DNA of 64,000 bases from Chlorokybus atmophyticus (GCA_009103225.1 RHPI01000401.1:1-64000), one strand, 5' to 3'. Counted from the stretch's first letter, positions 501-29,277 are shown. The notes: a model not told the origin generated them from the sequence alone. Numbers and translations are program-made.

Positions 501-658
501 TGAAATACACCAAGTCCCAAGTGCCATCGAACATTCAACACCACTTGACAAAACTGCCGATGTGAAATTACACCAAGTGCCAAGTGCCATTGAAAGTTCA
601 ACACCACTTGGCAAAACTGCCGCTGTGAAATTACACTAAGTCCCAAGTGCCATTGAAA
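501..658. repeat. Tandem repeat, about 63-bp unit, about 2.5 copies
   Basis: TGAAAT(T)ACAC(C/T)AAGT(C/G)CCAAGTGCCAT recurs three times about 62-63 bp apart. Confidence 0.85.
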
Positions 659-794
659 AGGCAAGCATGCTAATGGCATGCATTCCAAATTCTATTCTAT
701 TAAGCACAAAGTTAGCTTGGGCTACTATTACACAGCTGGCCAATGAACCTGTGCTTTTGACTACAATTTAGCTATGTACCAACCGCCTGCTACT

Positions 795-2665
795 TCACAT
801 CCGCCGTGACGTTTGCTGTGCTGGCATGCTGTCCATGAGTGTTCGCAGTCGTCTCCTTAAGCTGTCTGCCTCTTTTGGACGAAACCAATCCTTTTGCATC
901 TGCGTTGCACACACCCACACCATCTGGTTGCTCAACACATGTCAACCTACACGACTTTGCACTAAGGCAGCTGCCATATGGAGACATTCCAATGCATGAG
1001 CTGTACCTGCTGAAATATCGGGGCGTTTTGCTCAATCGGACTAGCTTGTATCCCATCTATAAACCTGTCAAGGTAAACAATGACAAACAGCCCGCACGCA
1101 ACTCCATCCCTCTGCTGAGGGACCTGCACGAACACGCTATGTCAATGCGGGCGAACCAAACGTATGTGCATCTACATAGGGATTGTGCTGGGAGAGGGCG
1201 TGACCTCATCACCAGGCCAAAACAACATGTCCTACCTGTGGATCAAGTAGCGGGACGTTTGCGGGAGAGAAGCGCTGTTGCGACTCACTTCCATGCTTCC
1301 TGCCCCACATATAGTTTAGATAAGCGCGCATTGGTCCGTCGACGTTGCGATGTAGACCAAGGGAGTCGAGATGGACGATCAAGGGCGGCGTGTTGCTTCC
1401 AAGTTCCCCTCCAGGATTGCACACCAGCAGCAGACTCCAGTGAGACCTGTGGCATGCAGACTTCAAAGTGAGTCCATGCGAGCAAGTACAGCAGCACTGC
1501 AGTGCGAGAACCTGGCTTCACTCTCACCGGCTGTCTGGGTTGACAATTGCTGCCAGCAAGTTCTTGGAAAACGGATCGTTCTCCCACCTATCTATCCTGT
1601 GATTGCCACTGTGCCAGTTATGTTGTTCATGGCAGTGCACAATTTTAGTGTAGAAGTGCGGGTTGAACAGCCTCACGTGAATGCCTTCAGCTCTGCCCAC
1701 GACCTCCTCTTCCTTATATCTGCGCGTGCGTGTCACATACATGACACAGCTGCACAACACCAACAACGCAAGGCTCATACCTGCAAAAGAAGTGGAGCAC
1801 GGTGTCGTTGAGCTCCTGTCTGCCGTCCAGCAACTTTCTGTCCGCTTCAAACACTGGCACCGCATCACGTGCATTTGCACTAGGGTAAATGAACAGGGGC
1901 ACAGGTGTTGACGCCTCAACTTCAGCACCCGGCCCGTCCAGCACCATGATGTCATCATCGCTGTCAACGAGGTCCACAACTGCTGCAGCCGTCGCGGTTC
2001 CTTGACTTGGGTGCTGGCGACGTTCCCCGTTGGCATCCTCATCATCAAGTTCCATCGGGACTGGCTCTGCAGCGTAAAAAGGTAGGATTATGCAATAAGC
2101 GCCGCAACGCAAACCAAGAAGCGCCGGCACGTTGCTGCTTACCACTCATATCCTCATCCCCGCACTCTTGAACAAAGCTTTTACCCACGCTTTCAGTCGG
2201 TGGTTGTGAAACCCAACCGCTGCTGCCCGGCAGAGAACGACGCGCGAGGCTATCCCTTGGAAGCTGTGCCGGAGCCCCACCTTCTTCGTACGCAGCGCAT
2301 TGCGAGCATGTGACCGAAAAGATGTTACCAACAGCATGACGTTGACAGAGGCTGTTTGGGCATGTCGCGCATACTTATCGAGCTGGTTCATTGCATCTGT
2401 GCACATGGCACCTGCGTTCCAGTGATCATTTTAGAACTTGTTGACTTCAGACACCATGCGTTCACTGGATACTGAAGCTTACTTGTGCCTTGGGCATTCC
2501 CAATGGTCATCTTCCACAGGTGGTACAGTGACGCAGCGTGCGTGGTAGCTCTTCCAGCAGCCTTCTGCATCACAGGCGAATATGCTACCGCCATCCTTGC
2601 AGACAAAGCAATAGTCTTCGTGTTCACGATTCTCCAATGCATCCAGCTCTAGCCCCGGTCTCATC
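795..2665 (-). pseudogene. PHD finger + C5HCH zinc finger + Ulp/SENP (peptidase C48) SUMO protease; one in-frame TAA
   Basis: Phase-compatible GT-AG exons give EDYCFVCKDGGSIFACDAEGCWKSYHARC...WECPRHKCHVHRCNEPAR*VCATCPNSLCQRH, then LFIYP...LNDTVLHFF, FNPHFYTK, SHWSLLLVCNPG, HLDSL, PQQRDGVACGLF and DWFRPKEADSLR. The His-Asp-Cys triad and oxyanion Gln are present. TAA at 2375-2377; final TGA at 795-797. Confidence 0.85.
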
Positions 2666-2919
2666 CTGCAAACCAAGGTCAGGTGCCCAGATCTGCAGTC
2701 ACACAACAGTAGGTATATGCAGCATCACAATAGCAAAGAGTACCTCATGTACTCAAAATGCCAGTCACGGCGTGTGGTTCACGACACCTCGCTCGAAGCA
2801 CTGTTTGTTTCGCTGTGGTCACCCTGCACCATGTGCATGTACACAAGATGGTTGTATGTGATGCCAAGACCCGGGAACTATGAGGACACCCAGATTCTCA
2901 CAAACAAATCTGCTCTCAC

Positions 2920-5900
2920 CGGAGTGAGTCGCGGTGCACACCTCGGCGCATGAGGCTTCGCCTGTCTTTGACAAGCGCTACTGTTATTTTGGTGTCATAC
3001 GGGTCAATACCCTCAAACCACTGGCCCTTGACCTGCCAGCAAGGACATGTATCACCCAATCTCACTCTACCATCAACTCGCAAAAACCGCTGCAACACAC
3101 CTACTTACTAGGTTGCAATCAAGGTAGGTTTGTTCTGCAAAGCGGGGCTTGTCTTTCCTCAGGATTGCAAAGCCTCCCATGTGCTGCACCTGGTTGCTCA
3201 TGTACCACCTCGCTCTGAGGAGCTGGTGCTCCCAACCGGCTACCACGACAACATCAAAAGACTGCACCCTGCCATACCAGTGGACCTTCTTGGTTGGGTC
3301 ATTTGAGTCACGCCCAACGGTAAACACTCCGCAGTCCATAGTGCGGAGCTTCTTCTCAGTGTCCTCCGCTCTGAACTGGCCAATGTCCTTGTAGCGCGCT
3401 CTGTAGTACCTCATAATGTACTTTGGAAACATGGGACCACTCAACAGCTCCATCTCGTGTTGAGTAAGCTCCCTATCAGGTCCACGCCAATGATGCAGCT
3501 CAGTCATGTGCTCCATGTCACTGGTCACGAGATTCCCTTGTGCTTGGGCCCTTTCGCGTGTCTTCCGCCGTTTTTGAACAGCCCGACTGAATTCTCTGTT
3601 TACCAACCCATTGTGGACTCATAATATGCAGGGGACATTGCGTACCAAACAACGATTGCTAAAGCAACTTACTCTTTTAGCTGCCTGTACTCATCGTCAT
3701 TTTCGGCCAACCACCACTCCAGCTCCTGCCTGATCTTGCTATCTTTCTCACACTCAACACGGTGTCTGCGCCCGCAGAGGACATAGTCATCATCATCTCG
3801 CTCCTTGCCCGATCGCAGACTGATGCCGACGAAAAGCCTCTTCAAGGTGTCCATGTAAGTGTTCAACATGAGCTGGATGGAGTATCTGCAGACATAACTT
3901 GCATTTAACACAAGTCAAAGAACGAGAGTACGAAACAGGTTGCATGCAACTTTTAGTTGGCCCAGACTTGCCTTTTGCAGATGCTTGCTTCCACATGCTG
4001 CCTGGCAAAAATCATGCGCTTCACCCACTGCATAAATCGTTCGTCGGCCCACTCCCAGTGATCACGCACCGGACCAAGCCACATGCATTGCTCTGGTAGA
4101 TGGCCAAGGAGGTGCAGCATCATTGTGAGCGAAGTCCGCGGGAAGAGCAGCTCCACCTCAGACTGTGCCTCATGCACCAGCACCTGCGATGAATAATGCA
4201 AGTCATGCAACCTGTAGAAGCTAAGCATACACATGGAAGGTATGGTTAAAGCCCTAACCTGCAGTTCTTCAAGGTGTGACTGCTTCACTTCCAATGCAGT
4301 CAGCCGCTGATAGATGTCGCAGAGTTTGAGGATTGTTTTCTTCTGATCTTCTCCAATGTCATGAGCAGAGCGCAGCACGTACTGGAAAATCACGGACCAC
4401 AAGTTGTGCTTGTCGTGCGATTTCATCGAGCCTGTGTGCTCACTACATCAGATTGTTAAGTAGACACAATGTGCAATGCAAGGACACTGAGTTGATTTGC
4501 ACGCAGTTGAGAACCATGGTGGTTGTCTCACCTAAATGCTTGGTGAAAGATTGCAGCTTAGAGCCGAAAGTGCTTGGAACCCTCACGCCTGAGAGTAATT
4601 GCTCAACCAGCCCTGCATCCGTGATTGCCCATGGAGCCTGAGGTTTGACCTTAACTGCAACTTCCTTTCCGTCTTTCGTCATCATCTCTGTCTGCAACGC
4701 ATCATCACAAAGTCACACGAGTTGGCAGGCAGTCATCACAAGTGTCGCATAAGCCTGCAATACCTGTAGCCAGAGTTCTGGCATACGACCTTGCTGCTGC
4801 AAATCTTCTCGACTCTCATTGCTGTCGCGCAATCCAGCAAGCAGATTGGCCAAATTGGTTGCGAGATTGGCAAGAATGTGCATAGGGCCAATCACATGAC
4901 CTTTTACAGATTTCTGTAAAGGCATCCAATAGGGAAGGTCGTGAAAACAGCTTAGGCCAAGGATTCCGGAGGACTTTGAAGGATGTTTCTTGGAGTGAAG
5001 TGGTCGCTTGCTGTTGCGGGATGTCATGGCGTACCTGATCACATGGCATCCATTGGTGAAGCTTGATTGACATAGCTACGTTCAGCTATGTCAATTGATT
5101 GGTTGCTCACCGGTACACACTTTCTGCAGTCCGCATGGGAGGTGGAGGTCTGTGTTCTGGTTGGGGCCAACGCTCATCAACTCGGTAGGAATGGTCATCT
5201 GGTAAGTACCGGCGGTAGCCTTGATAAATCACCTTTTTAAGGAGTTCCACATGTTCTCCACTGCACTCGCATTTGGAACAGCCAAAGATGGCTCCATGAG
5301 CCATCTGCATGGCTGCTTTTGCCAGAGCTGCGCAACCATCATTACATGTTTCAGAGAAGGCAAACATGGTTGCCATACCAGTCAGATAGTACATTCATAG
5401 ACACTGATGGCCAACACTTGCTGCTTGCGTACCTGGGTAATCATGGATTACAATCTCCAAGATAGATCTGCACCGGAAAACTTCGTCGCGGTGGCTGTCA
5501 TATATGTCGATGCCTACAACAAACACCAGCAGCTGAGATGCCCTACACATTCCAGTCCAGAGCAGTTTAAGAGCATGTTTGATGTATCGAGAGCTGGCTT
5601 GTTTAAACTACATTGAAACCACACCTTCCCAAAGGGTTCCCAACTGGTCAATGATTGGCTTGAGATAGGCCTGTAGATTCTCTGGCTGTTTGGGACCAGG
5701 TATCACCGCAGCTAGAAAGGTAGTGTCGGTCTTGTGCATTTTGGCAATGGGCAGGTTCAGCACAGAGATTGTGACAAGCCAAAATTCATAATTCCCTGCA
5801 AGTCCACACAAACACCTCGATCAATGCCAACTGTGAATTTACACACTGCAATGACAGCACAGGTAAAAGGCACAATCACTACCTTTATGCGGATCTTTGA

Positions 5901-7521
5901 AAGGGCTCATCCCGTCAATAAACATTGCCAGCCGCACATTACGCGGCTCTTTGATAAACCGGATGTAGCGTTCTTCTGTATGCTTGAACATTGGCGAGTC
6001 TGACAGCAGCAACCACATAAATAATAGTAAACATCTAAAAATTCAGGCTGCATTGGGCATCAACTTGTCAATCCACACTGCCATATACATACCGTGTATG
6101 GATCGTATAACCCCATCCTCACTGCGATTGGTGTGCGCTGTCATCTCCAAAGCGACACTAGGCTTTAGGTAAAGAGACCTCAGAGCAGCAGGCACGTCAA
6201 AGTAACGTGCAATCTTCCAAGGAACTTGTCGACCTCCAATGTTGCGGTGGCGAGGAGCCTTGCAGACTGCAGGCCATAGGAAGTTTGCATGCTGACAGGT
6301 GATCCCATGACAACTCAATCACACAAGAAATGCTACAATAGCTGACCTTTGCAGAATTTCCTGTTGGCATGTCGGCCATAATACACCATGTGGTCACAAC
6401 AACAGGCGTCATACGCGTGGAAGCCCATGTTGAGGCTTGCAAGGCATTTCAGTAGCTCTTGCATGCTGCCTGGCATCTGATTCTCCTTGGGCAAAACAAC
6501 ATCACGCACCAACCTGGCACACAAAGTCAAGTTCAATTGGAAATTAAACATTAATGTCTTTGCAGAATGTGTTTTGTATAATTTTGCAAACCTCTTATCC
6601 ACCAACCTTAGCAGTTTGTTCATGAAGTTGAAGGGTATTCGATGTAGCTGAGCGAGAACCAATAGCAGCATGGAAATGCCTAAAGGGGTTGTACGAGAGC
6701 CGGCAACAATAGGGTTGCTTGCATTGTCCAACAGCGCAGCATTCACCTTGTCAAGCAGCATTGCCTCGTCATCACCATGAGTGTCATACTGCTGCGACTC
6801 CACATCGGTATCGGAGTCTTGGTCTACGCCATCACCATCACCATCAACTTGCTCCGCATGTACTTGATTAGCGGTTGAGGGGGAGTGCGCTGGCAAATCA
6901 TGCTCGTGCGGAATTGTGTATTCTGGAGTTCTGGCACCTTGATGTCCTCGCGATACAGGATGCTCACCTTCAGAGAATGCTGGGTGCAATTCGCTCTGTT
7001 CCCCATGATCACACGGATGACATCCTGCCAACGCGAATAAATGCACTGGCACATGGACAATGACGTAAGCAATCAACTTGCAACTAAATTAGGTCGTACC
7101 TGCTGGGCGCATGTGATGTGCAACATTGACATGAGATGCCACACTCGTTTGCGATGGCGTGGCTGGGTGCAGTTGTTCAGCAGCGTAGTTCCATGCATGA
7201 AGTGTTTCGGTGTGATGGACAGCATCATCTGAAGCAGGCAAGCTTGGTAATCAGACAGCCTGTTGATGAAGTACACCAACTCAGGAAGATTACTCTTGTA
7301 CCTGACAGCATGTGCGAGGATGCAGCAGCAATAACAGCGTCAGCCTCTTCAAGTTCATCGGGTTCGAGAAGATTACGGTATTGCGGTTCAACAGCTTTAG
7401 GAGTGCCCATCCACATCCTTGTGCCATGGTACTCATGGTTTTTGGCCCTAGTGATGTGCTTGTGTGTGAACACTTTGCTCCCTTGGCAATCTTCGCAGAA
7501 ACACCTGCGATTGTAGCTCAT
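2920..7521 (-). CDS. CACTA/CMC DDE transposase (Transposase_21 + DUF4218 + DUF4216-like), about 16 exons
   Basis: Manual splicing gives a continuous frame: CKVC, EPRNVRLAMFIDGMSPF (D1), NLP...IPGPKQP...YLKPII, IHDYPA (D2), CSKC, RRYLPDDH, LPYW, PMH, MKSHDKH, HLLGH, WEWADERF (E), WYGRV...ARWY, GQWF..IDPYD. One intron (3971-3886) is GC-AG. The 3' end is uncertain and may continue into the PHD exon. Confidence 0.9.
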
Positions 7522-7809
7522 GCTACAAAGATGTTTAGTCAACTATTATCCTGACATACAACCACCAAACTATCTAGAGCCCTGACCTGATACCGCCGCC
7601 GCCGCCGCTGATACCGCCTTCGCCGCCGCTCTAGCATCGCTGTTGTAGAATTAGGGTTTAAAACCGTCAATCCTAAATTGAAAGCTAGATCCAGTATAAG
7701 CCGCGGCTTCAGTCCGGATGTGCTCCGTAATTTGCGTACGTGCTCCAGTTTTTCTTCCGTGAAGTGCATCAGCTACTAGGGTTTAAATGGTAGGTTGCGT
7801 GGCGGCAGT
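7522..7809. promoter_or_regulatory. Short divergent intergenic region, putative bidirectional promoter with two telo-box-like motifs
   Basis: 288 bp between the transposase ATG (7521, minus) and the methyltransferase ATG (7810, plus). TTAGGGTTT at 7651-7659, TAGGGTTT at 7777-7784, and CCG runs. Confidence 0.4.
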
Positions 7810-9482
7810 ATGCGCGGCGTCAAGGTGTGCAGTTTCTGCAGAGCATACTTGGTTAGAAACGGCAACTTGAAACGGCTGCAACAGCATGAAGAGAAGTGCA
7901 AGCTGTACAGTGAGCAGTATGGCTTCTATGAAGCCTGCTGGCACCATAAGGCCCGGGGAGATAACGTGAGGCAGTGCAGGCTTCTAGCAAAATGCATGAA
8001 GCCAGACTTCTTTGTCGAGGAATGCACTTGCCTGCAATGCTCGCTCTCCAAGTTTGAGTGGGACGGCGAGCCCATGGATCACCTGCCTTGGGCCCGGCCT
8101 GGAGCATATCAGGATGGGCAGGAGTGTGATGTGGTGCGACGTCAGCTCGCGCGCAACGGTCGCGGCAAGTCCACAGTCCAAGATGATCACAACAACAAAG
8201 TGAGTTGAACTGTCCTGTCCTGGCGCACAAACAGCGCTCTCATACGTAAGCAACTCACTCTTCAATGTTGAAGGGGAATGTAGCAGTAGTTGATGCAGTT
8301 GACGATACCGCGATAATAACCGCGTGGCGAAAGGAGATTGTTGATGAGGGGCAGTCTTTGGTAGCAAGCCGCGTCGTGGTATACTGGCTTGGAATGAGCA
8401 CCTGGTATGCAGGCCGCATCATCACTTTCAATGCCAACACAGGTACATGTGTCCAAATAATGCAGAGTATGTGATGTACGTGCGCGTGTTTACGCAAGCA
8501 CTGGCTCAGTAAAACATGTGGCTCAGGAAAACATACCATCAAGTACGACGATTACGATGAGGATCCGCGGCTGCACCACATCTTGTTGAAAAACTGGAAC
8601 ATCGCAGCTGTGCGTGAGGGTTACAACATGCAAGATGTCGTTGCAGTGATGGTTCGAGTTTGTGGTCAAAGCTGTCTGAGACTGCAAGACTTGCCTGGTC
8701 GCGAGCTCGATTATTGGCCCAGGCCACCACCCCTTCTCGTAACTCGCACACCATGCGACTCAAGCGGTAGACGTTACAGGCCACGCGCATTGGATCTCTT
8801 TTGTGGTGCCGGTGGCGTTGCTATGTGTCTGTATAGGGCTGGGTTTGATGTTGAGGGTATAGACATTAAGCCACAGCCGGCATACCCATTCAAGTTCTGC
8901 CAGATGAATGCAATGGACGCTGACCTGTCAGCATACAATGCAGTGTGGGCAAGTCCTCCATGCCAAGCTCTTAGTGGAGCCATTCCCACGACACAACGGT
9001 CCGCATACGGATATCGATGGGATCACGTCAACCTGATTGACCCCATAAGAGCCAAGTTGCAGTCGAGCGGCAAGGCATGGGTGATAGAGAATGTCGCAGG
9101 CGCGTCAGGACACATGACAACTCACCTGAAGCTGTGTGGCAGCATGTTCAAGTTGGATGTGTATCGCCATAGCATCTTCGAGACAAACCCTCTAGTGCGC
9201 TCAGACTTAGAATGCAACCACACTGGTTCTGCACTTGGAGAGCTGGCCACCCACCCGGAGCAGCGCCGGCAGTTGCTACCTGGGGAGAGGCAAATTTACC
9301 CGGTATACGGCCAAGCATCTTGCCGTGGTACGATTGCAGGGTGGCAGTCTGCCATGCAGGTGGAGTGGATGGATGCGGAATCGGAAATCAAGAATGCTAT
9401 TCCACCTACTTACTCTGAACATGTAGGCAGGCTGTTGCTGAAAGCGATAGGTTTCAATGTCGATTACCCTCCTTTTTACTGA
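7810..9482 (+). CDS. Cys-rich N-terminus + Tudor domain + phage/actinobacterial-type DNA (cytosine-5) methyltransferase; 3 exons, about 504 aa
   Basis: Exons 7810-8199, 8274-8442 and 8527-9482 join in frame. Tudor-like LVASRVVVYWLGMSTWYAGRIITFNANTGKHTIKYDD. MTase motifs: I DLFCGAGG, II GIDI, IV ASPPCQ, VI IENV, VIII CGSMF...YRHSIF, IX AMQVEWM, X NAIPPTYSEHVG. Confidence 0.9.
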
Positions 9483-9567
9483 GACACGTAGAGGACTTTG
9501 CAGTTGTAAGCTCTCTTGATTGCCACAGAGGTCTCATTTGTGATCACACCTGCAGAATGGTAAGGTT

Positions 9568-12162
9568 TCACTGAGGTTGCCGCTGCTGCTGCTCTTTGTG
9601 CTCGCGCCGCTGCTTCCGCTGCTCCTTCTTTTGCTGGCACTGTTGCTTCCGCTGCTGCCGCTTCTGCTCACGCTCCTGAAAGAGTTGCTGCTTCAGCTGC
9701 TCCTGCTGCTCGAGTGTTGGCTGCTTGCCTATCACTGCTCGCTCACGCTCATGTTGACGTTTCTTAGCCAGTTTCTTGCTTTGCCGCCGATCATCAATGT
9801 GTTCACGTTTTTGCAACTTTAACATCTCCATGGAGTTTGCTTTGCGTGCGGAAAAATTCTCTCGATTGAGATGGTGCTTTTGCAAAGTCTCATTCAGCTC
9901 GTTTTCGTTTTGCTTGCAAGTGCGCACAAGCTCGTTGAACTGGTCATCCCGCCAATCCTGGTTCAAAGGACCCTTCGCAACGCAATTGCGCACTCCTTTC
10001 CTAAGCCCCTTGAGAAAAAGCTGTAGTTTGAGGGCATCATCCACCTGCAGCGCTGTCGCGTTGGCAACCATACACAGATGTTCGAACTGCGCGTGAAACT
10101 CCTCCACTTTGCGACCTGCCTGCCGCAGATGGCGCAGCTTCTTAAAAGCGCCGGCAGGGGTGTTGTCCATTTGCGAAGGAGCTCGGTTGCGAGTACGACG
10201 GCGTTTGCGCTTCTTGCTTGTGGTGGCACGACGAGGAACACCAGAGGAAAGACTACTGGTTGATGTGCCAGATTCATCAGAAGAGCTCTCATTGCCCTGC
10301 ATTGCATCAAGCTCGGTGCCACATTGCGCAACTCCACACTTGCTCTTGCACGCAGACAGCATGACAGTGCTCACCTGTCCATCAGCTGGGCTCATGGGTT
10401 CCGCCTGATTCTGGACTTCCACCTCAACCTCTTGGTTGACCTGTGCCTGCTTGGCCTTGGCCTCAGGCTGCTTCTCCCTGGCCTTGGCTTCAGCCAAAGT
10501 CTGCTCCTGCCTGGCCCTGGCTTCAGTCTCAGCCTGCTCTTGCCTGGCCCTGGCTTCAGTCTCAGCCTGCTCCTGCCTGGCCTTGGCTTCAGCATCAGCC
10601 TTGGTCTTCGCCTCGCCCGCCTGCCTGGCCTTGGCCTCAGCCTGCTCCTGCCTAGCCTTGGCCTGTGCTTGCTGCTTCAAGCTGGCCTCGACCTTCTTCA
10701 TGCACTCTGGACCCATCCTCAGCTTTGGCTTTTGGACCTTCGCGCTTGCCTGGGTCTCAACCTTGCCTTCTCCCTTGGCCTGGGCCTCAGCCTCTTGCAC
10801 ACACACAGCTTGCGACTGCACAGGGGGTCTACTTGAAGATGTAGGCGCCTGGAGTGGCGCCGATTTGGCACTGGGTGCTGATTGCGGAGGACCATCAGGG
10901 TACAGGCAGCGCAGGACTTCTGGTGGCATGTCACAGAGCTGCCATGAGAGCCTACCACTCGCATCGCCAAGAGACATGTAATGCGCGCATGCCTTGCTCC
11001 CGTCTGTATTGCCAATAATCACATGGCCAGCCACTTTCTGAACATCCTCGCCGATCAGCACCACAAGCTTGATACACTGCAGCTTTCCTTTGTCATCAGG
11101 TTTATAATACCTCCCGTCATCCCCTTTGCTGAGTACCCCCTTGTCCTCCGCTTATAGGATGTACTTGCAGTCACCAACCTCCTTGAGCTGCACGGTGCCA
11201 ATGCAAATGCCCAGTGTGTGCGCCAGCAGCGCCAATTGCAGTTGATCCGCATAAACACCCTCATGACTGATCACTTTCTTCAGAGCAACAACAGCTGCAT
11301 CACCTTCATCTTTTCCATCGAGAACCGTTGTTACCCGGAATTTCTTGGCGGCCTTCTTGTAGTCCTCGCCCATGTCACCAGAGGCCCCGTAGTTACGATA
11401 CGTCCGTAACCAACGAACGTTGACCTGGTCGGCACACATCTTGCGCAACTTGGCAGCTTGATCTCTCGTATGCAGCTCTTTGCCGTTGTCCAGCACGATG
11501 CTTCGCCAGAAAGCCTCGTTGTTGATTGCGCCCACGCGTTCCAGGCACGCAGCGTTGACGGGAGGGCGCGACTGGGCAATGCAAGAGTAGAAGCAGTTGC
11601 CATCAGCATAGGCGTCAAAGAGCCGCAGCTTTGTCTCATGCAGCAGCAGTCCAATCAGCTCCGCCTCATCGCCCGGTTGTGGAGGAGGTAGACCAGACTC
11701 CCAACGACCACCAGTAGATGCACGACCCGTTGATGTGCCCACTTCAGCTTCAGGTTCTCCGACAAAGTTCCCAAGGTCAATACTCGCAGCTGCTGCCTGC
11801 TTGTCACACAGCTTGCTGAGCTGCCGCCGCAAGAACTGATCCAACTTGACTCTCCATTCATGCGAGAGGGCGAGCAAATCAGCTTTCTCCAACCGCTGCT
11901 TGTATTTGACCACCAGCTCTTCCCATGTAGGGCAGTCTTCCTTTTCCTCTCTCCATACTTTTGCATAACCTACGCAAAGGGCCTTGAAATCATTGAAAAC
12001 CTCTTCGTCGGTCTTGTTTGCCCGGATCTGCGGCTTCTTCACCTCTTTTCCTGGTTGCAATGACCGGTATGAGCACGAGTTGGTGTGAGAAAGTTTACAC
12101 ATTCCAAGAGTACCTGCACGCTGCTGCTGACCACTTGGCAAGACCTTCTGCTTTGGTGCCAT
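9568..12162 (-). pseudogene. OTU deubiquitinase + repetitive coiled coil + retrotransposon Gag-like domain; one in-frame TAA
   Basis: The 364-aa and 498-aa ORFs are in the same frame, separated only by TAA at 11152-11154. OTU motifs AYADGNCFYSCIA, GVYADQLQLALLA and AHYMSL. Gag-like AFKKLRHLRQAGRKVEEFHAQFEHL...LFLKGLRKGVR. Confidence 0.8.
10440..10690 (-). repeat. Coding tandem repeat, 33-bp unit (about 11 aa, AETEARARQEQ-like)
   Basis: CTGCCTGGCC(C/T)TGGCTTCAG recurs with 33-bp spacing at about 10508, 10541 and 10574. Confidence 0.8.
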
Positions 12163-12247
12163 TATGAACAACCTGTGTCGACACACACAGAAAAACTTAC
12201 AAGCAGACACGAAATGATCAAGTGAGCCAAGTTTGGAACTGAGCAAG

Positions 12248-13372
12248 CAGGGACCTTACGCACGAGGCTGCCCCATGAGGTCAGCATGAACAGAGGCGTG
12301 AATTGACAACATGCAAGACAAGGTTTGCTTGAGGTCAGCATGAGCATGCAGGGGCCTTACGCACGAGGCTGCCCCATGAGGTCAGCATGAACAGAGGCGT
12401 GAATTGACGACATGCAAGACAAGGTTTGCTTGAGGTCAGCATGAGCATGCAGGGGCCTTACGCACGAGGCTGCCCCATGAGGTCAGCATAAACAGAGGCG
12501 TGAATTGACGACATGCTAGACAAGGTTTGCTTGAGGTCAGCATGAGCATGCAGGGGCCTTACGCACGAGGCTGCCCCATGAGGTCAGCATGAGCATGCAG
12601 GGGCCTTACGCACGAGGCTGCCCCATGAGGTCAGCATGAACAGAGGCGTGAATTGACAACATGCAAGACAAGGTTTGCTTGAGGTCAGCATGAGCATGCA
12701 GGGGCCTTACGCACGAGGCTGCCCAATGAGGTCAGCATGAACAGAGGCGTGGATTGACAACATGCAAGACAAGGTTTGCTTGAGGTCAGCATGAGCATGC
12801 AGGGGCCTTACGCACGAGGCTGCCCCATGAGGTCAGCATGAACAGAGGCGTGAATTGACAACATGCAAGACAAGGTTTGCTTGAGGTCAGCATGAGCATG
12901 CAGGGGCCTTACGCACGAGGCTGCCCCATGAGGTCAGCATGAGCATGCAGGGGCCTTACGCACGAGGCTGCCCCATGAGGTCAGCATGAACAGAGGCGTG
13001 AATTGACAACATGCAAGACAAGGTTTGCTTGAGGTCAGCATGAGCATGCAGGGGCCTTACGCACGAGGCTGCCCCATGAGGTCAGCATGAGCATGCAGGG
13101 GCCTTACGCACGAGGCTGCCCCATGAGGTCAGCATGAACAGAGGCGTGAATTGACAACATGCAAGACAAGGTTTGCTTGAGGTCAGCATGAGCATGCAGG
13201 GGCCTTACGCACGAGGCTGCCCCATGAGGTCAGCATGAGCATGCAGGGGCCTTACGCACGAGGCTGCCCCATGAGGTCAGCATGAACAGAGGCGTAAAAA
13301 CGACAACATGCAAGACAAAATTTGCTGCAATATAGCCTGAGCATGCAGGGGCCTTACGCACGAGGCTGCCCC
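12248..13372 (-). repeat. Tandem array of 101-bp and 47-bp units sharing one core; 14 cores
   Basis: CTTACGCACGAGGCTGCCCC starts at 12255, 12356, 12457, 12558, 12605, 12706, 12807, 12908, 12955, 13056, 13103, 13204, 13251 and 13353. Confidence 0.95.
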
Positions 13373-14378
13373 CTACGATCAGCATGAGCAAGAATGGGCC
13401 TTGAGAGCGGTCAGCAAAACAAGCGCAAACAAAGAGGAGCGCGGCATGCACTACACCTGGCTTGCGAATTCTTCAAACCCTACCAAGCTGCCTATGAAGC
13501 TGCAAGAGAGATCTACACAAAGCGGTTGGAGCACCGATGCGAAACGGCTTGCAGTACACCACCACAGCAACCACGCCGCCTCCCGCTCACACCGCCGCCA
13601 CCACCGGCCGCCGCCACCGCCGCCACAACCGCCGCCTCAAACCACGTCACGCAAAAAATGCTGCACTACTGCAGGTGCTCAACTCCAAACCCTACAACCG
13701 TGCACTATTCATTGAAGCAACCCTGTACCGCGCGGCAGGCGGCGCTGTACTGGGCAAGGGTCATTGAATGATGTATTGCAAATTGGGTGCAATCGATCCA
13801 TCTGTAAAAATGCATGTAGAGGGTATGAATTGCACCAGGTAGTCCTATATGCAGCAACCAGGTATAGGCCGTCACTATAGAACAACCACATGGAAACAAA
13901 GACAGTAGATGCACATGTGAAGGTTGTGTAATTTTGTGCGTGGTACAAGTGCACATACAATTCCAGCACTTGCACTAGACCAGCCCCCCTAGCTGTAGTT
14001 GTTGTGGTTGTGCCTGGTGTTGCTGGTTAATGTGACGGCTGGTGCACGGTGTGTGTTGATTGGGGGCGCCGTTATTTTCCTTAAACAATGTGGCGTGCAT
14101 ATGCGCATGCATTAGATATGTAACAGACTACGCATGTAAGCATGTTGCGTACAGAAAACGCAAGACATGCGTGTGATGGAGTACCCCGTATGCACAGACA
14201 GCAGCCGCTATAACAGCAGGTTCTCATTGCAGGCAGGCAGGAAGCACATGTATACAACGCCACTGGCCTATTGGAACTGGTCTTATGGCCCACTGATCGA
14301 GCAGCTAGGGGCCTACTGGAACCTCAACAGCAAGACATTGAAAGAGCAGCTATGTACAAGGTGAAAACTGCTGCTGAC

Positions 14379-16068: not shown

Positions 16069-17356
16069 GGGGCAGCCTCGTGCGTAAGGCCTCGGTGACC
16101 TTCCCTGCGCCCTTGCACAAGTTGGTTGGGGGAAAACGCTGGGGCAGCCTCGTGCGTAAGGCCTCGGTGTCCAGGTTGCATGCTTGCATTATGCGTGTGG
16201 TTTTCAGTTTCAGTAGTTTTGCGGTGGTCACCTGCGCTTGGGTGCGATTGCTTGGATGGTTTACTTGCTTGCCTTCACATATGTGCGTGTGCTGGTGTCT
16301 GTGTGTGTGTGTGGTGGTTGGGGGGTGGGGGCTTGGGCTTGTGTCGTTGCTTGTCGTGGTGTGTAAGTTTCCTTCAATTGCAAGCCCGTGAACTCAGTCA
16401 TACCTGCGTGCATGTACATGCAGGTCATGAAAGCATCCGCGAGCGGAAGCCTGGCAAAGCGTCCCAAGACGCATTCAAAGACGCCTCAGCCATTGCCATA
16501 CATGAGTCCAGAATTGACTGACAAACTTCTCCAGGTGGGCAAGCGCCCGGGGAAGGTGCAGCGCTGGTTGGGGAAGGTTAGCATCGGTGACGGATACAAG
16601 CAGTGCAAGCTTGATGACTGGGCGGTATCCACGCATGGCTACGAGGACACTGGCCCTTTGGCTATTCGAACCGTTGTGAAGGGTCCAGTGACGTGCAATG
16701 TATCGCAGCATGAGAGAGCCACCAGCCCGGCGGCGCCGCCCGACCCTGTGCCCGACCCTGAGCCCGCTCCCATGCCACTGCTCACGTCCTTCGATGTTGG
16801 CGTCATTGGCTACACTGCTGTGCGTCTCACCATCGAGACCGTCAATCAGACTCCAGTTGGCTGGAGCCTTGCATCGGGATCAGTTGTGGGGGATGTGCTG
16901 CGCGCAGGGCCGATCATACCTATCGTGGATGGACCTTGGCCCATGCAGCTACCCGAGGCCCAGTGACTCTGTGCACATGCAATGCGTGTACAGTTTTGTG
17001 CAGGTTCAGGCTGTCATAGTGGTGCTGTCTGAGCCATGTACCAGGTTCAGCAGTGACCTTGGCCAGTGACATTGGCGAGCAAGCCCTTGGCCCCATATAT
17101 ATATATATTCTTGCATGTAAGTATGTGTAGATGCATGTGTGCGATCAGTCTGCAGCACTGCATCAAAGAATGCAATGGTGGGAGTACAACTTAGGCTGTG
17201 TACATGGTCTGCTGATGTCCGTCACAGATTGCATTCCCCGACATGTGTTGGTGTATGTGCTGGGGCAGCCTCGTGCGTAAGGCCTCGGTGTCCTTCCCTG
17301 TGCCCTTGCACAAGTTGGTTGGCGCAAAACGCTGGGGCAGCCTCGTGCGTAAGGCC
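16069..17356 (+). repeat. Four further copies of the GGGGCAGCCTCGTGCGTAAGGCC core, inverted relative to the 12-13 kb array
   Basis: CCTCGTGC at 16076, 16148, 17269 and 17341, as two pairs each 72 bp apart. Confidence 0.9.
16427..16966 (+). CDS. Hypothetical protein, about 179 aa
   Basis: ATG directly after a TGCAG acceptor; uninterrupted, protein-like ORF; no motif recognised. Confidence 0.45.
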   Translation: MKASASGSLAKRPKTHSKTPQPLPYMSPELTDKLLQVGKRPGKVQRWLGKVSIGDGYKQCKLDDWAVSTHGYEDTGPLAIRTVVKGPVTCNVSQHERATSPAAPPDPVPDPEPAPMPLLTSFDVGVIGYTAVRLTIETVNQTPVGWSLASGSVVGDVLRAGPIIPIVDGPWPMQLPEAQ

Positions 17357-17415
17357 TCGGTGTCCAGGTTGCATTCTTCTTGTAAATGCGTCTGCAGTTG
17401 TGATGGTTGTGGGTG

Positions 17416-17503
17416 AGTTGTCAACTACTACTACCAGTGGGGCTCGCAACAACCACATTAGTGTGGAATTCGTGAGCCACACTGGCAGTAGTAGTTGACA
17501 ACT
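17416..17503. repeat. Compact 88-bp inverted repeat with 30-bp arms (2 mismatches)
   Basis: AGTTGTCAACTACTACTACCAGTGGGGCTC at 17416-17445 versus its near reverse complement at 17474-17503. Confidence 0.9.
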
Positions 17504-18237
17504 ACGGGTTGTAGCTCCGCCTAAACAGATGTTCGAGTTATTTATTCTTTATTATCGCAATTTGGTACACTATAGTACATAAGCAATTTGGTACACTATA
17601 GTACACAAATGCAACATTATTCATTGTCATCTTTGTGCTTGTGACAGGCGGCATTTATTATGGTAGGTCGGAGACAGAGTCGTGAGTCGTGAGTCGTGAC
17701 TGGGGGAGGTCGGAGACAGAGTCGTGAGTCGTGACTGGTGTCTGATAAGCACATTTGCTGACGTGTCGAGCAGAATGCACAATCGATTCCATACGCACGG
17801 CAGTACCCTACGCAGTGCTTGTTGCTCGTGGTGTTGGCGGCGGCGACGACGGCGGTAGGTGAGCGGCTGCTAGCGGCACACTTGTCTGTCTCACTGTGCT
17901 GCTATCGGTTTCATGCTCAATTCCTCATGACCATAAAGCACAGCTTTCTTGTAGACATGCAGGCAAGGTTTGTGCATGCACTGGCATTTGCCGGCTAGCT
18001 TGCTGTTCAGCTGCACTAAGTCATGTTAGCAGCTGGCAGGGAGCTGAACGACGTGCTTCGGCAAGGTAAAGTACAGTTTGCTTGATGTGTGAAGTACATG
18101 CACATGGCCAAGCAGCTGCAGGCAACTGAGGCAGTTAACTGAGGTTTCTGGTTGAACAGTGTTGCGGTTGTGCACAGCTTGACAAGCAGTTTGACCTACT
18201 AGTTTGACCTACTCAATACACAGGTGGAGCAGTGGTC

Positions 18238-20908
18238 ATGTCAGGCACGACGTCTGGTGGGCGGTCTAGCGACCTGAGTGGAGGCTGGGAAAGCTTGGAC
18301 GATGAGATCTGGGGCAAAAGTGCTGGTGCACCATCAGATGAGCAGCTCCAGCGTGAGTGGGAAAAATCTGAGAAGACGGCTCACCTCCGCGACCTTGAGA
18401 CCACAGCAATGATGCCCTTGAAAGTGAGCTTACAATGATGTGCAAGCAACCACTATCAATATGAGCATGTGCTGCCGGAGTCTGTCTCGATTTTTGAGGT
18501 TTGCACAAGCAACTCACACTGTTGATATTGTTGTAACAGCGCTCTAGTATGCAATATTTGCACTGTGTAGGCACTAAAGGTCCTTCATTGGCGTGGTCAG
18601 CATCATACCAGTGATCGCCGCGATATCACAAAGCTGGCGGACAAGGGCCGGATTTGCTATGAGTACTGTCGTTTGCTACCGGGGAAGACCCAGACGAAAC
18701 AGGACCCACTTAAGTTTGCTCTTGCAGTTACATGCTGGCATCTGCTTCATCCAGAGTTCCGTCCTGAAAAGGTTGGCAAGGTTGTCAGAGTGTCACCAGC
18801 TGTCGAGCAGCATAGTTCAAGCTTGAAGGATATGGCATTCGGTGGCAGTCACCACTCTGGGCCTGGTGCAGGCAAAAACAATAATTCAGGACTTTCTTAC
18901 CAACAAAAAGGCATATACCAACGCCAAGCACAAAGAAAGGCAGAGACAGAAGAGTAGGGAACGTTACAAGGAGATGATAGAGCGCGCTGAAGCAGGGGGG
19001 TTTGAGCGAAAGCGCAAGGGAGCGCCCAGGGACAAGAACAACAAGGTGTGTGCCATGCAGTGACTGAGTTGTCTGTGCAATGTTTGCATGTCTTAAGTGC
19101 TTTTGCCATGTGCATAATTGCAGGTCAAAGACAAGTCAAAGGCAAGAGACAGCTCCTCGCTGCACCACTCTGCCAGCGACGCCGAGAATGCCACCTCACA
19201 GGGTGAGCTACGGTTTGGTAAATGACTATGTTGAGAACGAAACGCTTTGTGTTTGATGGTGCCTTATGTATGCAGGGTGTGAGGTGTGTATGATAGTCCC
19301 TTGTGCATGCACGGCGCCCACGCGTTCACCTCCCGCCAGCAACACCAGCGACGACCGAAATGTCACCTCGCAGCGTGAGCCATGTTTTGCGCGCGCGAGT
19401 CGCTACGGGAGGTATTGTGTATACACTGTTCTGATCGGTGCCTTGTGCGTGCGATAGGTAACAAGGAAGGCACTGCGCCACAACCCACAAGGTCACCCGC
19501 TACTGGTTCACAGGTTAGATGTCTGTCATCATTACACGAGCAGCCAAATGCTTGTACTCTCCTGTACATGTCATCATGACCGTTCATGGCTGTTGTGTTC
19601 AGGCACCTGCCAAACAAGATGCTGATGTGCGTGATACCAGCTCAGCTCTCAAGGTATGCAACAACGACTGGAGCAAGTACTTAACAAGCATATCAGTTTT
19701 TGCAACCGAAATCGCACCACATGTAGACACAGGACGCCGCGAATGTCATGGAGCTCATGAAAGAAAAGGAAGGCAGAGGGCAAGGGAAGCGCAAAGTGTC
19801 TGGTGATGTACGCACCACTCTGCTTCACAACAAATGGCGTAGCATTACGTTGTGGCTCACAATCTGATGTGTATGCCGTTGGCAGGAGACTGAGGTGTTA
19901 AGCCCCCAAAAGAAAGCAAAGACTGTTCGCTCAATTCCGGCTCCCTACAAGTCTAAGGAGGCAGGCCCCTCGTCTGGCAAGCAGGAGAAGATGTTGGATC
20001 AAAAGAGGGGCAAGCAAAAAGAGGTATGAAGGACCATCTATGTGCGCTTATGGGCTTCTTGGATTCTTCTGGTTGCGGAAAAACTGTCACTGCAGCAGAC
20101 TCGCATGCATGCCTATCAATTGTAAGCTTGATAACACGGCGTGCCACCTGGTTGCACAGGATGAGCCATCGTATTCAAAAGTATCCGAGACAGACAAAAG
20201 CGAGGACAACGATGAAGATGGCGCCAAGGACGATGCGAACAGCCCCAACGACAGTGACAACGACTCCCAAAAGGCAGGTTTTTTTGCAAGCGCTATATAG
20301 GATAGTGCATCTGTGTATGTGTTTGCCAGTTGATGTGTTTGTCACTTGCATGCGCAGGAAGACCTGAGCGACAAGGATGACACTGCACCGACGATGAAGG
20401 TTGGTGATGAAGTCAAGTTGTTCATCGATGGGCGCAAGGAGCCAGTAGGGGAGGCGCACGTAAGCGACATCAAGCCCGTCAACAAGTTTTATGGCAAGAA
20501 GATTGGAGAGGGTAACATGGTGGTCCAGTTCAGCCGCAGTCTTCACATCACTAGGACCTGACGTCCTGGTGCAGGGGAAGAAGAGGTTGTGCCTTTGCCA
20601 ATCAGCTTCAAGCGTGATGGGGTTGGAGTGCAAGTGACCCACTTGAGAGGTGAACGATGATTGCGTGCTGACTGTGCGTGCGTTATGACAACACACTGCG
20701 TCTGACGTATTCATGTGTGGTTGATGCATGTGAAGAGTGCGAGGCGGGGTTGTTGCTACTTTGGCCTACTAGGTTGATGAAGACCATCAAGGTGAGGGAG
20801 CTGCCAGCAAAGGAAGGCACATCCACACCGCGGGGGAGAGGCCGTGGGAAGGGGAGTTGGGGTGGTCGGGGTGGTCGGGGTGGTCGGGGGCGAAGCAGCA
20901 GGAAGTAG
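18238..20908 (+). pseudogene. TnpA/Tnp1-like CACTA accessory protein; multi-exon, disrupted
   Basis: Many short GT-AG introns and acidic/basic low-complexity exons. C-terminal KVGDEVKLFIDGRKEPVGEAHVSDIKPVNKFYGKKIGEGNMVVQF...GLLLLWPTRL resembles the En/Spm Tnp1-like C-terminal domain, followed by an RG-rich tail. Apparent frameshift near 18840 and TGA at 20559-20561. Confidence 0.55.
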
Positions 20909-29259: not shown

Positions 29260-29277
29260 TGCTTTAACGCAGCAAGC

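What the first reader, a model, noticed from the sequence alone, without database searches (positions are those of the whole stretch)
795..20908. Giant CACTA-type transposon carrying a chromatin reader/writer/eraser toolkit
Seen: within about 20 kb, a CMC transposase and a TnpA-like gene bracket genes for a C5 DNA methyltransferase, Tudor, PHD and C5HCH domains, a SUMO protease and an OTU deubiquitinase. Known: Ulp proteases occur in MULE, CACTA and Zisupton elements, OTU in Ginger elements, and captured DNMTs have been reported in retrotransposons. I know of no single DNA transposon combining all of these. Inference: a self-contained anti-silencing or self-marking module that moves with the element.
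Basis: partly seen in the sequence, partly recalled or inferred. Interest (0 to 1): 0.88.

Follow-up and report, generated by a model that had tools for sequence, protein, structure and literature searches.

The report
CACTA transposase locus with chromatin-enzyme genes
A green-alga-like genome carries an 11-kb gene cluster that joins a cut-and-paste (CACTA) transposase to a histone-reading DNA methyltransferase and two protein-tag proteases, but nothing available here shows that the cluster moves as one transposon, and this copy is damaged.

Summary
They lie in 11.3 kb (962-12,162), not 20 kb.

Minus strand:
- A multi-exon CACTA/EnSpm transposase (Transposase_21, DUF4218), with the D, D, C(2)C, H(3)H and E motifs all present.
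- It is followed on the same strand by an NSD-type PHD plus C5HCH module and a Ulp1 protease.

Plus strand:
- 290 bp upstream of the transposase and head-to-head with it lies a three-exon gene. It fuses a Tudor-like domain to a short phage-type C5 DNA methyltransferase.
- 86 bp beyond that gene's stop, tail-to-tail, lies an ORF with OTU-like motifs, a coiled coil and a gag-like domain.

Not supported:
- The "TnpA-like" gene. 12.2-20.9 kb holds repeat arrays and no recognisable domain.

Signs of damage in this copy:
- In-frame TAA stops in C5HCH and in the OTU region.
- Substitutions at two positions that are invariant in the 65 aligned methyltransferase relatives.

Missing evidence for mobility:
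- No terminal inverted repeats, target-site duplication or second copy were found.
- The 150 nearest transposases lack these accessory domains.
- The source genome could not be reached with these tools.

Best reading (about 0.5): a decaying copy of a CACTA family with unusual accessory genes. Mobility as one unit is unproven.

The parts
2919..7542 (-). Multi-exon CACTA/EnSpm (CMC) transposase gene. It has a Cys-rich N-terminal exon (7542-7228), the Transposase_21 catalytic region (about 6318-5110, with short GT-AG introns), the divergent 'MHILAN' block (5075-4716), DUF4218 carrying H(3)H and E-R (4447-3956), and a C-terminal region (3618-2919).
   Evidence: Pfam Transposase_21 E=4.5e-18 and DUF4218 E=1.1e-8. 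tblastn with P0121, P0123 and P0125. D, D, C(2)C, H(3)H and E-R are all present at columns conserved in 70-139 relatives. Motif order follows PMC12730594.
2290..2664 (-). NSD-type PHD finger followed by a C5HCH zinc module. An in-frame TAA (2377-2375) interrupts the C5HCH. It is either spliced to the transposase or a separate gene starting at ATG 2663.
   Evidence: PHD_NSD 31.7 bits, above the cut-off. C5HCH E=7.8e-4, with the alignment running across the stop. Splice sites and the TAA were read from the sequence.
962..1870 (-). Ulp1/SENP-type cysteine protease (Peptidase_C48) in four exons. The His (SHW), Asp (DSL), Gln and Cys (QQRDGVACG) motifs are all present.
   Evidence: Spliced model: Peptidase_C48 E=2e-15, 57.7 bits, profile positions 2-193 of 217. 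Single exons. Exons were read.
7543..7809 (.). Short divergent intergenic region (a putative bidirectional promoter) between the transposase gene and the Tudor-DNMT gene. It is CpG-rich and holds two copies of TAGGGTTTAAA (a telo-box-like motif) and a (CCG)n run.
   Evidence: Sequence. The 11-mer occurs only at 7652 and 7777 in the window, against 0.03 expected. CpG o/e is 1.14 here and 0.63-0.74 in the flanking genes.
7810..9482 (+). Three-exon gene (7810-8199, 8274-8442, 8527-9482) encoding 504 aa. It has a Cys-rich N-terminus, a Tudor-like domain split by intron 2, and a short phage-type C5 DNA methyltransferase domain (aa 270-500) within the third exon.
   Evidence: GT-AG splice model from the sequence, giving an open 505-codon frame. 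DNMT. Tudor: PDB 7de9 E=1.3e-4 and sub-threshold Pfam Tudor hits. AF2 gives pLDDT 83-98 over most of the DNMT domain (lower in aa 331-350 and 421-440), and the top PDB fold match is the C5-methyltransferase ZMET2. G287C and R402S fall at columns invariant in 65/65 relatives.
9568..12162 (-). Intronless 864-codon frame with OTU-like protease motifs, a long E/A/K/Q coiled-coil repeat, a gag-like domain and a K/Q/E-rich tail. It is interrupted by an in-frame TAA (11154-11152) between the OTU Cys and His motifs. Its stop lies 86 bp from the stop of the DNMT gene.
   Evidence: OTU Pfam E=0.017-0.044. Retrotrans_gag 25.2 bits against a cut-off of 24.1. The stop was read. A weak PDB match to 7y5m_A aligns the DGNCF motif (that this chain is a viral OTU is my assumption).
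12240..13402 (+). Tandem array (101/47-bp units) holding 14 plus-strand copies of the 24-mer GGCCTTACGCACGAGGCTGCCCCA. It starts 78 bp upstream of the OTU ORF's ATG. It is a candidate subterminal binding-site array.
   Evidence: 18 matches in the window against 0 expected.
16069..17356 (-). Four further copies of the same 24-mer, in the opposite orientation and in two 120-bp direct repeats (16066-16185 and 17259-17378). An 88-bp palindrome follows at 17416-17503.
18208..20905 (+). Unassigned plus-strand ORFs: an acidic stretch, a possible small beta-rich domain and an RGG tail. Membership of the element is unsupported.
   Evidence: No Pfam family found. No similarity to a plant Transposase_24 gene that sits next to the closest transposase relative.

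Best explanation
This is a recently decayed copy of a divergent CACTA/EnSpm-family DNA transposon in a streptophyte-like green alga. In this family the transposase gene is followed by, or fused to, a PHD-C5HCH histone-tail reader and a Ulp1 deSUMOylase.

The family also carries two accessory genes:
- A Tudor-like reader fused to a phage-derived C5 DNA methyltransferase. It is transcribed divergently from a shared 290-bp promoter.
- A gene with OTU-like motifs, a coiled coil and a gag-like domain, placed tail-to-tail with the methyltransferase gene.

Inferred mechanism in intact copies:
- The DDE transposase cuts and pastes the element.
- The PHD and Tudor modules dock the element's proteins on particular histone-methylation states.
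- The methyltransferase writes 5mC in trans.
- The Ulp1 and OTU proteases strip SUMO or ubiquitin marks that hosts use in silencing and repair.

The net effect would be manipulation of the host's chromatin response to the element.

Shown here: the genes, their domains, their order, their tight packing and their damage. Inferred only: that they transpose together, and every biochemical role. This particular copy is probably no longer fully functional.
For: - Transposase: Transposase_21 and DUF4218. Catalytic D, D, C(2)C, H(3)H and E are all retained at columns conserved in relatives (with motif order from PMC12730594).
- All accessory domains lie within 11.3 kb, with intergenic gaps of only 290 bp and 86 bp.
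- Ulp1 E=2e-15 and the PHD_NSD-C5HCH tandem lie on the transposase strand directly downstream.
- Damage typical of a neutrally decaying transposon copy: TAA inside C5HCH, TAA inside the OTU region, and G287C and R402S at columns invariant in 65/65 DNMT relatives.
- The DNMT catalytic domain is contained in a single exon and is of the phage type: PHROG 363, at least 540 IMG/VR loci at 36-43% identity, and mostly metagenome-derived relatives, one of which sits on a prokaryote-type contig. This looks like an acquired gene, not a canonical eukaryotic DNMT1/3/CMT.
- Inverted clusters of an exact 24-mer next to the block resemble subterminal binding-site arrays.
- The window is transposon-rich: an RT ORF and a gag/zinc-knuckle ORF lie nearby.
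- Precedents exist for each part: Ulp1, PHD and OTU in transposases (PMC2836005); DNMTs in retrotransposons (PMC5890265); TET/JBP genes in EnSpm and other DNA transposons (PMC12730594); a mariner with a C5 methyltransferase (PMC3627910).
Against: - No CACTA/CAC...GTG terminal inverted repeat pair and no target-site duplication were found.
- The left end, if it exists, may lie outside the window.
- There is no second copy or fragment in the 64 kb.
- No close relative of the transposase or the Tudor-DNMT exists in the protein collections or in metagenome contigs.
- None of the 150 nearest transposases has these accessory domains.
- The nearest relative whose context could be read has an ordinary Transposase_24 partner gene instead.
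- The strongly conserved D-x-M-H-x-E-K-N block of the transposase is altered to G-P-M-H-I-L-A-N.
- The OTU assignment is sub-threshold.
Confidence: 0.5

Rival explanations
1. A chance mosaic in a transposon-rich region. A CACTA transposase (with Ulp1 and PHD), a separately acquired phage- or virus-derived methyltransferase gene, and a fragment of another element (OTU and gag-like) simply lie next to each other. They do not form one mobile unit.
For: - No shared termini were found.
- The gag-like domain is normally a retrotransposon feature.
- The region also holds an RT ORF and another gag ORF.
- The nearest transposases lack these genes.
- The repeat arrays at 12.2-17.4 kb could be the ends of a different element.
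Against: - Gaps of 290 bp (head-to-head) and 86 bp (tail-to-tail) leave no room for the termini, UTRs or LTRs that independent insertions would bring.
- The OTU-gag ORF has no pol gene next to it and is unrelated to the neighbouring gag ORF.
- All four modules touch the same theme, chromatin and protein-tag modification, which is unlikely for random neighbours.
Confidence: 0.25
2. A domesticated host locus. A transposase-derived gene with PHD and Ulp1 domains is paired through a bidirectional promoter with a Tudor-DNMT, and the pair works as a host silencing or chromatin module. This would be like other domesticated transposases that act on chromatin.
For: - No terminal repeats were found.
- The shared promoter is CpG-island-like and has two telo-box-like motifs of the kind seen in plant housekeeping promoters (the telo-box identification is from my own knowledge).
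- The conserved DVMHIEKN block is altered.
- A precedent is a domesticated transposase acting on Polycomb silencing (PMC4671723; known here only from the title and abstract listed).
Against: - Premature TAA stops in C5HCH and in the OTU region, and substitutions at invariant DNMT positions, argue against purifying selection on the whole set.
- The catalytic D, D and E, and the C(2)C and H(3)H motifs of the transposase, are all retained.
- No orthologue was found in any annotated genome in the collections.
Confidence: 0.15
3. Part of an endogenised large DNA virus, or a virus-borne transposon. The methyltransferase, OTU and Ulp1 proteases came in with viral DNA.
For: - The closest single relative of the DNMT (P0001, 40% identity) lies on a compact, intron-free contig next to what I read by eye as a 2OG-oxygenase-like ORF, and carries an MBD insert.
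- The catalytic domain is of the phage or virus type.
- A mariner inside a phycodnavirus encodes a C5 methyltransferase (PMC3627910).
Against: - The transposase has more than ten spliceosomal introns, and the DNMT gene has two.
- No viral hallmark gene was found in the ORFs scanned in the Pfam searches of 1-22.5 kb.
- GC and CpG content match the rest of the window.
Confidence: 0.05

Closest known systems
Plant-type CACTA / En-Spm elements (CMC superfamily)
   Same: The transposase has Transposase_21 and DUF4218. It has D, D, C(2)C, H(3)H and E in the canonical order. It has many short introns, and repeat arrays lie nearby.
   Different: At best 32% identity to any known transposase. No CACTA terminal repeats or 3-bp duplication were found. 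No Transposase_24/TnpA partner gene is present. PHD-C5HCH-Ulp1 lies downstream, and Tudor-DNMT and OTU-like genes lie alongside.
DNMT-encoding retrotransposons (SymbioLINE-Dnmt and SymbioDIRS-Dnmt3 in dinoflagellates; the Dnmt3-carrying retrotransposons of Klebsormidium nitens; PMC5890265)
   Same: A mobile-element locus encoding a C5 cytosine methyltransferase in an alga.
   Different: Those are class I elements with eukaryotic Dnmt3-like or lineage-specific DNMTs inside gag or pol ORFs. Here a class II transposase neighbours a short phage-type methyltransferase that is fused to a Tudor-like reader in its own gene.
TET/JBP-carrying fungal DNA transposons (KDZ, EnSpm, Plavaka, hAT, Helitron; PMC12730594)
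   Same: Cut-and-paste transposons, including EnSpm, that carry a separate gene for a DNA-modification enzyme. That enzyme is thought to act on silencing.
   Different: Those carry an eraser (a 5mC oxidase) and have defined ends and copies. Here the enzyme is a writer, and neither ends nor copies are defined.
Ulp1-, PHD- and OTU-bearing transposases (Ginger1, Mutator-like elements, Helitrons; PMC2836005)
   Same: Ulp1 (sometimes with PHD) or OTU protease domains attached to or encoded with a transposase.
   Different: Different transposase superfamilies. No case was found with Ulp1, OTU, a PHD-C5HCH module and a DNMT together.
Mariner-1_OLpv in a phycodnavirus (PMC3627910)
   Same: A DNA transposon encoding a C5 DNA methyltransferase of prokaryotic type.
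   Different: That is a restriction-modification-like trio (transposase, endonuclease, methylase) in a viral genome. It has no chromatin-reader domains and no introns.

Membership tests
CACTA/EnSpm (CMC) DNA transposon | [quoted passage not shown] | tested here: met
   Pfam E=4.5e-18. D (139/148 relatives), D (108/116), CSKC, HLLGH (72/77) and E-R (70/77) are all present. Motif order is taken from PMC12730594.
CACTA/EnSpm (CMC) DNA transposon | Terminal inverted repeats beginning CACTA or CAC...GTG | tested here: not met
   No pair scored above chance, for left ends in 1-30,000 and right ends up to 40,000. The true left end may lie outside the window, so this does not exclude membership.
CACTA/EnSpm (CMC) DNA transposon | Target-site duplication of 3 bp (2-5 bp) | not testable with these tools
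   It needs defined ends, or an empty site in another genome or haplotype.
CACTA/EnSpm (CMC) DNA transposon | Subterminal arrays of a short binding motif in both orientations | tested here: inconclusive
   An exact 24-mer occurs 14 times on the plus strand (12.25-13.37 kb) and 4 times on the minus strand (16.07-17.36 kb). None occurs near the left side (1-1100).
CACTA/EnSpm (CMC) DNA transposon | Several copies in the genome, with cargo co-occurring with the transposase | not testable with these tools
   No second copy in the window. The source genome is absent from the searchable collections.
CACTA/EnSpm (CMC) DNA transposon | Second gene of TnpA / Transposase_24 type | tested here: not met
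   No Pfam hit for 18.2-20.9 kb. No tblastx similarity to the Transposase_24 gene that flanks relative P0130.
C5 DNA methyltransferase (PF00145 superfamily, short phage type) | Motif I FxGxG, motif IV PCQ with the catalytic Cys, motif VI ENV, and the C-terminal (A/G)IPP motif | tested here: met
   DLFCGAGG, SPPCQ, IENV and AIPP all fall at invariant columns of 65 relatives. PHROG 363 E=1e-23. Pfam itself gives only 18-20 bits against a cut-off of 22.
C5 DNA methyltransferase (PF00145 superfamily, short phage type) | The family-invariant R-H-R block (probably the motif VIII arginines) and the Gly after motif I | tested here: not met
   R402 is Ser and G287 is Cys in the window, while 65/65 relatives have R and G. 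Activity of this copy is therefore doubtful.
Ulp1/SENP protease (Peptidase_C48) | Catalytic domain with His, Asp, Gln and Cys | tested here: met
   Spliced model E=2e-15 over profile positions 2-193 of 217. The SHW, DSL and QQRDGVACG motifs were read.
OTU deubiquitinase (PF02338) | OTU fold with a Cys loop (DGxC) and a C-terminal His loop | tested here: inconclusive
   Pfam E=0.017-0.044, below the cut-off. DGNCFY and AHYMSL are present but separated by an in-frame TAA. The AF2 model has pLDDT 35.
NSD-type PHD-C5HCH reader module | A PHD finger immediately followed by a C5HCH zinc module | tested here: inconclusive
   PHD_NSD is above the cut-off. C5HCH gives 20 bits against 26.3, is in the right place, and is interrupted by a TAA.
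Tudor (royal family) methyl-lysine reader | A Tudor beta-barrel | tested here: inconclusive
   PDB 7de9 E=1.3e-4. Five Tudor-type Pfam families, plus Agenet and a chromo-like family, match the same 45 residues, all below their cut-offs. The AF2 model shows three strands there, but at pLDDT 36-52. The aromatic cage was not examined.

The most novel reading that the evidence does not exclude
Intact relatives of this locus are an active CACTA family that carries its own chromatin toolkit: a Tudor-targeted C5 DNA methyltransferase of phage origin, a PHD-C5HCH reader, a deSUMOylase and a deubiquitinase. That would be the first cut-and-paste transposon of a cellular eukaryote known to write DNA methylation itself.
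Probability: 0.35. Interest if true: 0.75.

Novelty: new variant of a known kind. Interest (0 to 1): 0.55.

Why it matters
Transposons that encode enzymes of the host's own silencing system show that the conflict runs both ways. Known examples are DNMTs in retrotransposons and TET/JBP oxidases in fungal DNA transposons.

If this block does move as a unit, it would add a class II element that couples histone-mark readers to a 5mC writer and to SUMO and ubiquitin erasers. It would also show a phage-type methyltransferase recruited into eukaryotic chromatin by fusion to a Tudor-like domain.

That would give a compact, testable system for asking whether element-encoded methylation protects, hides or restrains a transposon. 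If it does not move as a unit, the Tudor-DNMT fusion is still an unusual eukaryotic methyltransferase architecture that is worth cataloguing.

Tried and rejected
1. Variant genetic code (TAA/TAG read as Gln) to explain the two in-frame TAA codons. Rejected: the interruptions in the transposase frame include TGA and have GT-AG borders, so they are introns under the standard code.

2. Loss of the catalytic glutamate. I first read the altered D-x-M-H-x-E-K-N block as an inactivated active site. I rejected this after PMC12730594 placed the catalytic E after the C(2)C and H(3-4)H motifs, and the window was found to keep HLLGH...ADER.

3. Terminal repeats. Three searches found only chance-level matches: CAC-anchored, blastn word size 7, and CACT[AG]-anchored with 2- and 3-bp duplication checks. 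The 88-bp palindrome at 17,416-17,503 contains a CACTAATGTGG-like end, but it has no partner elsewhere in the window.

4. External copies. Two metagenome scans found nothing. An exact-product look-up of the OTU ORF found nothing. The protein searches returned only distant relatives.

5. Identity of the organism. Callose synthase gives 50-65% identity (mostly 54-60%) to land-plant enzymes, but no near-identical hit.

6. TnpA-like gene. No Pfam hit and no similarity to a genuine Transposase_24 gene.

7. OTU structure prediction without an alignment. Useless: pLDDT 35.

8. A link between the gag-like domain and the neighbouring gag ORF. None found.

9. Rfam and tRNA scans. Nothing found.

10. CpG depletion as a sign of self-methylation. 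The block is only slightly lower than the host gene (0.63 against 0.72-0.75), so this is not decisive.

Full report
CONTEXT

The window is eukaryotic nuclear DNA.
- Coding regions are split by short GT-AG introns.
- A plant-type callose synthase occupies about 44.7-52.4 kb on the minus strand. It gives FKS1_dom1 E=6e-29 and 50-65% identity (mostly 54-60%) to land-plant enzymes, with no near-identical hit.
- An RT ORF (30,701-32,620; RVT_1 E=1.6e-13) and a gag/zinc-knuckle ORF (22,483-23,115) lie nearby.
- GC is about 50-56% across the first 26 kb and in most of the window. CpG is moderately depleted in most of the window.
- The source is most likely a streptophyte or other green alga. Its genome could not be reached in any collection available here.

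WHAT IS IN THE FINDING'S COORDINATES

I translated all stop-to-stop frames and scanned them with Pfam. I then rebuilt exon chains by eye and by tblastn against the nearest homologues.

Transposase gene (minus strand, about 7542 down to about 2919):
- It is a multi-exon CACTA/EnSpm transposase: Transposase_21 E=4.5e-18 and DUF4218 E=1.1e-8.
- It aligns over the whole catalytic region to plant and lancelet CACTA transposases.
- It is very divergent. The best hit among 1.84 billion representative proteins is 32% identical (E=3.9e-35).
- Against up to 148 aligned relatives it keeps the first Asp (FIDGMSPF), the second Asp (IHDYPG), the C(2)C motif (CSKC), the H(3)H motif (HLLGH) and the E-R pair (ADER).
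- That is the motif order described for EnSpm and related transposases in PMC12730594.
- One strongly conserved block, D-x-M-H-x-E-K-N, reads G-P-M-H-I-L-A-N instead. Its role is unknown to me. I do not take it as proof of inactivity.

PHD, C5HCH and Ulp1 (same strand, directly downstream):
- An NSD-type PHD finger gives 31.7 bits against a cut-off of 23.9.
- After a 77-bp intron comes a C5HCH-like zinc module. It gives 20 bits against a cut-off of 26.3, and the alignment runs across an in-frame TAA at 2377-2375.
- A Ulp1 protease follows in four exons. Once spliced it gives Peptidase_C48 E=2e-15 over nearly the whole profile, with the His, Asp, Gln and Cys motifs present.
- These modules may be spliced onto the transposase: a GTGAGT donor follows the exon that ends at about 3090. 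Or they may form a separate gene starting at ATG 2663. This cannot be decided without transcripts.

Tudor-DNMT gene (plus strand):
- Only 290 bp separate the transposase gene's first exon from a divergently oriented three-exon gene (7810-8199, 8274-8442, 8527-9482). It encodes 504 residues.
- Residues 155-199 match a solved Tudor domain (7de9, E=1.3e-4) and several Tudor-family Pfam models, all below their thresholds.
- Residues 270-500 are a short C5 DNA methyltransferase.
- The methyltransferase has 7250 homologues. The 120 best listed are 205-438 aa proteins, nearly all from metagenomes, at 38-48% identity.
- The one relative whose context I read lies on a prokaryote-type contig.
- It matches PHROG 363 at E=1e-23 and at least 540 loci in viral contigs.
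- With an alignment, AlphaFold models most of this domain at pLDDT 83-98, and the best solved-structure match is the plant C5-methyltransferase ZMET2.
- Motifs I, IV and VI and the AIPP motif are intact. Two columns that are invariant in 65 of 65 relatives are changed: G287C and R402S, the latter in the R-H-R-x-F-E block.
- The closest single relative (P0001, 40% identity) carries an MBD insert. It lies on a compact contig next to an ORF that I read by eye as 2OG-oxygenase-like.

OTU-like, gag-like ORF (minus strand):
- 86 bp beyond the DNMT stop, tail-to-tail, lies an intronless 864-codon frame (12,162-9,571).
- It has a DGNCFY motif and, 160 codons later, an AHYMSL motif. These are the hallmarks of the OTU Cys and His loops.
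- Pfam OTU reaches only E=0.017-0.044, and a TAA at 11,154-11,152 separates the two motifs.
- Downstream come a coiled-coil repeat and a partial Retrotrans_gag domain (25.2 bits against a cut-off of 24.1).

WHAT IS NOT THERE

- There is no Pfam hit, even for a spliced version.
- There is no similarity to the Transposase_24 gene that sits beside the closest transposase relative in its own genome.
- 12.2-20.9 kb contains tandem arrays and unassigned ORFs.

The recognisable genes therefore occupy 11.3 kb, not 20 kb.

IS IT ONE MOBILE ELEMENT?

This is the core of the interpretation. It could not be tested directly.
- No CACTA-type terminal inverted repeats or target-site duplications were found by three different searches.
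- The left end may lie beyond the window.
- No second copy of any of the four proteins exists in the window.
- Two metagenome scans found nothing.
- The protein collections hold no close relative of the transposase or of the Tudor-DNMT.
- None of the 150 nearest transposases contains anything homologous to the PHD-C5HCH, Ulp1, Tudor-DNMT or OTU parts.

Indirect evidence favours a transposon copy over a host locus or a chance mosaic:
- The packing is extremely tight and leaves no space for independent termini.
- The four modules share one theme.
- The methyltransferase domain is acquired, phage-type, and contained in a single exon.
- The damage looks neutral: two TAA stops and two substitutions at invariant positions in otherwise open frames.

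An exact 24-mer occurs 14 times on the plus strand at 12.25-13.37 kb and 4 times on the minus strand at 16.07-17.36 kb, against 0 expected. It looks like a protein-binding array of the kind found in CACTA subterminal regions. No copy lies on the left side, so it may belong to this element's right end or to a different element.

MECHANISM (INFERRED)

In intact copies:
- The DDE transposase would excise and reinsert the element.
- The PHD-C5HCH and Tudor-like modules would tether element proteins to specific histone-methylation states.
- The methyltransferase would deposit 5mC in trans.
- The Ulp1 and OTU proteases would remove SUMO or ubiquitin marks.

Comparable roles have been proposed for DNMT-bearing retrotransposons (PMC5890265), for TET/JBP-bearing DNA transposons (PMC12730594), and for Ulp1- and OTU-bearing transposases (PMC2836005). 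None of this was tested here, and this copy is probably not fully functional.

COMPARISON AND NOVELTY

Each ingredient has a precedent:
- Ulp1 (with PHD) and OTU in Ginger1, Mutator-like and Helitron elements.
- DNMTs in retrotransposons.
- A C5 methylase in a virus-borne mariner.
- DNA-modification enzymes in EnSpm and other fungal DNA transposons.

Four literature searches on transposon-encoded methyltransferases and accessory domains turned up no DNA transposon of a cellular eukaryote with a Tudor-fused C5 methyltransferase, and none combining all these modules. I therefore rate it a new variant of a known kind. That rating is conditional on the unit being mobile.

VERDICT

- Observation: partly confirmed.
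- Interpretation: partly supported.
- Best explanation: confidence 0.5.
- Interest: 0.55.

Noticed in passing
window 12252-13372 (+) and 16069-17356 (-): The exact 24-mer GGCCTTACGCACGAGGCTGCCCCA occurs 18 times (two copies carry one mismatch), against 0 expected. Fourteen copies lie on the plus strand inside a 101/47-bp tandem array, and four lie on the minus strand about 3 kb further on. Only the core is shared between the two contexts. That suggests a binding site rather than simple duplication.
   Followed up: partly
window 7652-7662 and 7777-7787: TAGGGTTTAAA, a telo-box-like motif (AAACCCTA on the other strand), occurs only twice in 64 kb. Both copies lie in the 290-bp CpG-rich divergent region between the transposase and Tudor-DNMT genes.
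   Followed up: partly
window 17416-17503: An 88-bp imperfect palindrome (42-nt arms, 83% complementary) whose centre reads CCACATTAGTGTGG. It resembles two CACTA-like termini placed head to head. It is unique in the window.
   Followed up: partly
window 8668-8670 and 9013-9015 (codons 287 and 402 of the Tudor-DNMT): The methyltransferase has Cys and Ser where all 65 aligned relatives have Gly and Arg. The Arg lies in the R-H-R-x-F-E block, so this copy may be catalytically impaired.
   Followed up: yes
window 6318-5110 (-): Four consecutive short introns of the transposase gene all keep the same reading frame (their lengths are multiples of three) and contain one or two stop codons each. The chance of this is roughly 1 in 81.
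   Followed up: no
window 26515-26558: An interstitial (AGGGTT)x7.3 run, that is, a TTAGGG-type telomere-like repeat. It sits just before an AT-rich stretch at 26-28 kb.
   Followed up: no
window 27852-34406: A retroelement with an RT ORF (30701-32620, minus strand) and a possible tyrosine-recombinase-like ORF (30002-30631). It has 360-bp repeats at 28107, 28730 and 34047 (98.6% identical) and a 612-623-bp tandem duplication. It looks DIRS-like.
   Followed up: partly
window 36943-37735 and 42111-42903: A 793-bp direct duplication (99% identical, 5168 bp apart), each copy containing the start of the same ORF (MLQVMVLLDRLGG...).
   Followed up: no
window 44700-52400 (-), gap 49681-50198: A plant-type callose synthase gene, interrupted by a 518-N assembly gap. 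It is the only clear host gene in the window.
   Followed up: partly
L003 (Logan contig SRR24908243_470800) 606-1568: The closest relative of the window's methyltransferase has a methyl-CpG-binding domain (MBD) inserted between its catalytic halves. It sits 65 bp after an ORF that looks 2OG-oxygenase-like by eye. This is a second, independent fusion of this phage-type methylase to a chromatin or DNA-mark reader.
   Followed up: partly
window 501-659: A 63-bp tandem repeat (2.5 copies, 89% matches) just beyond the 3' end of the Ulp1 exons. It shares no motif with the arrays on the right side.
   Followed up: partly
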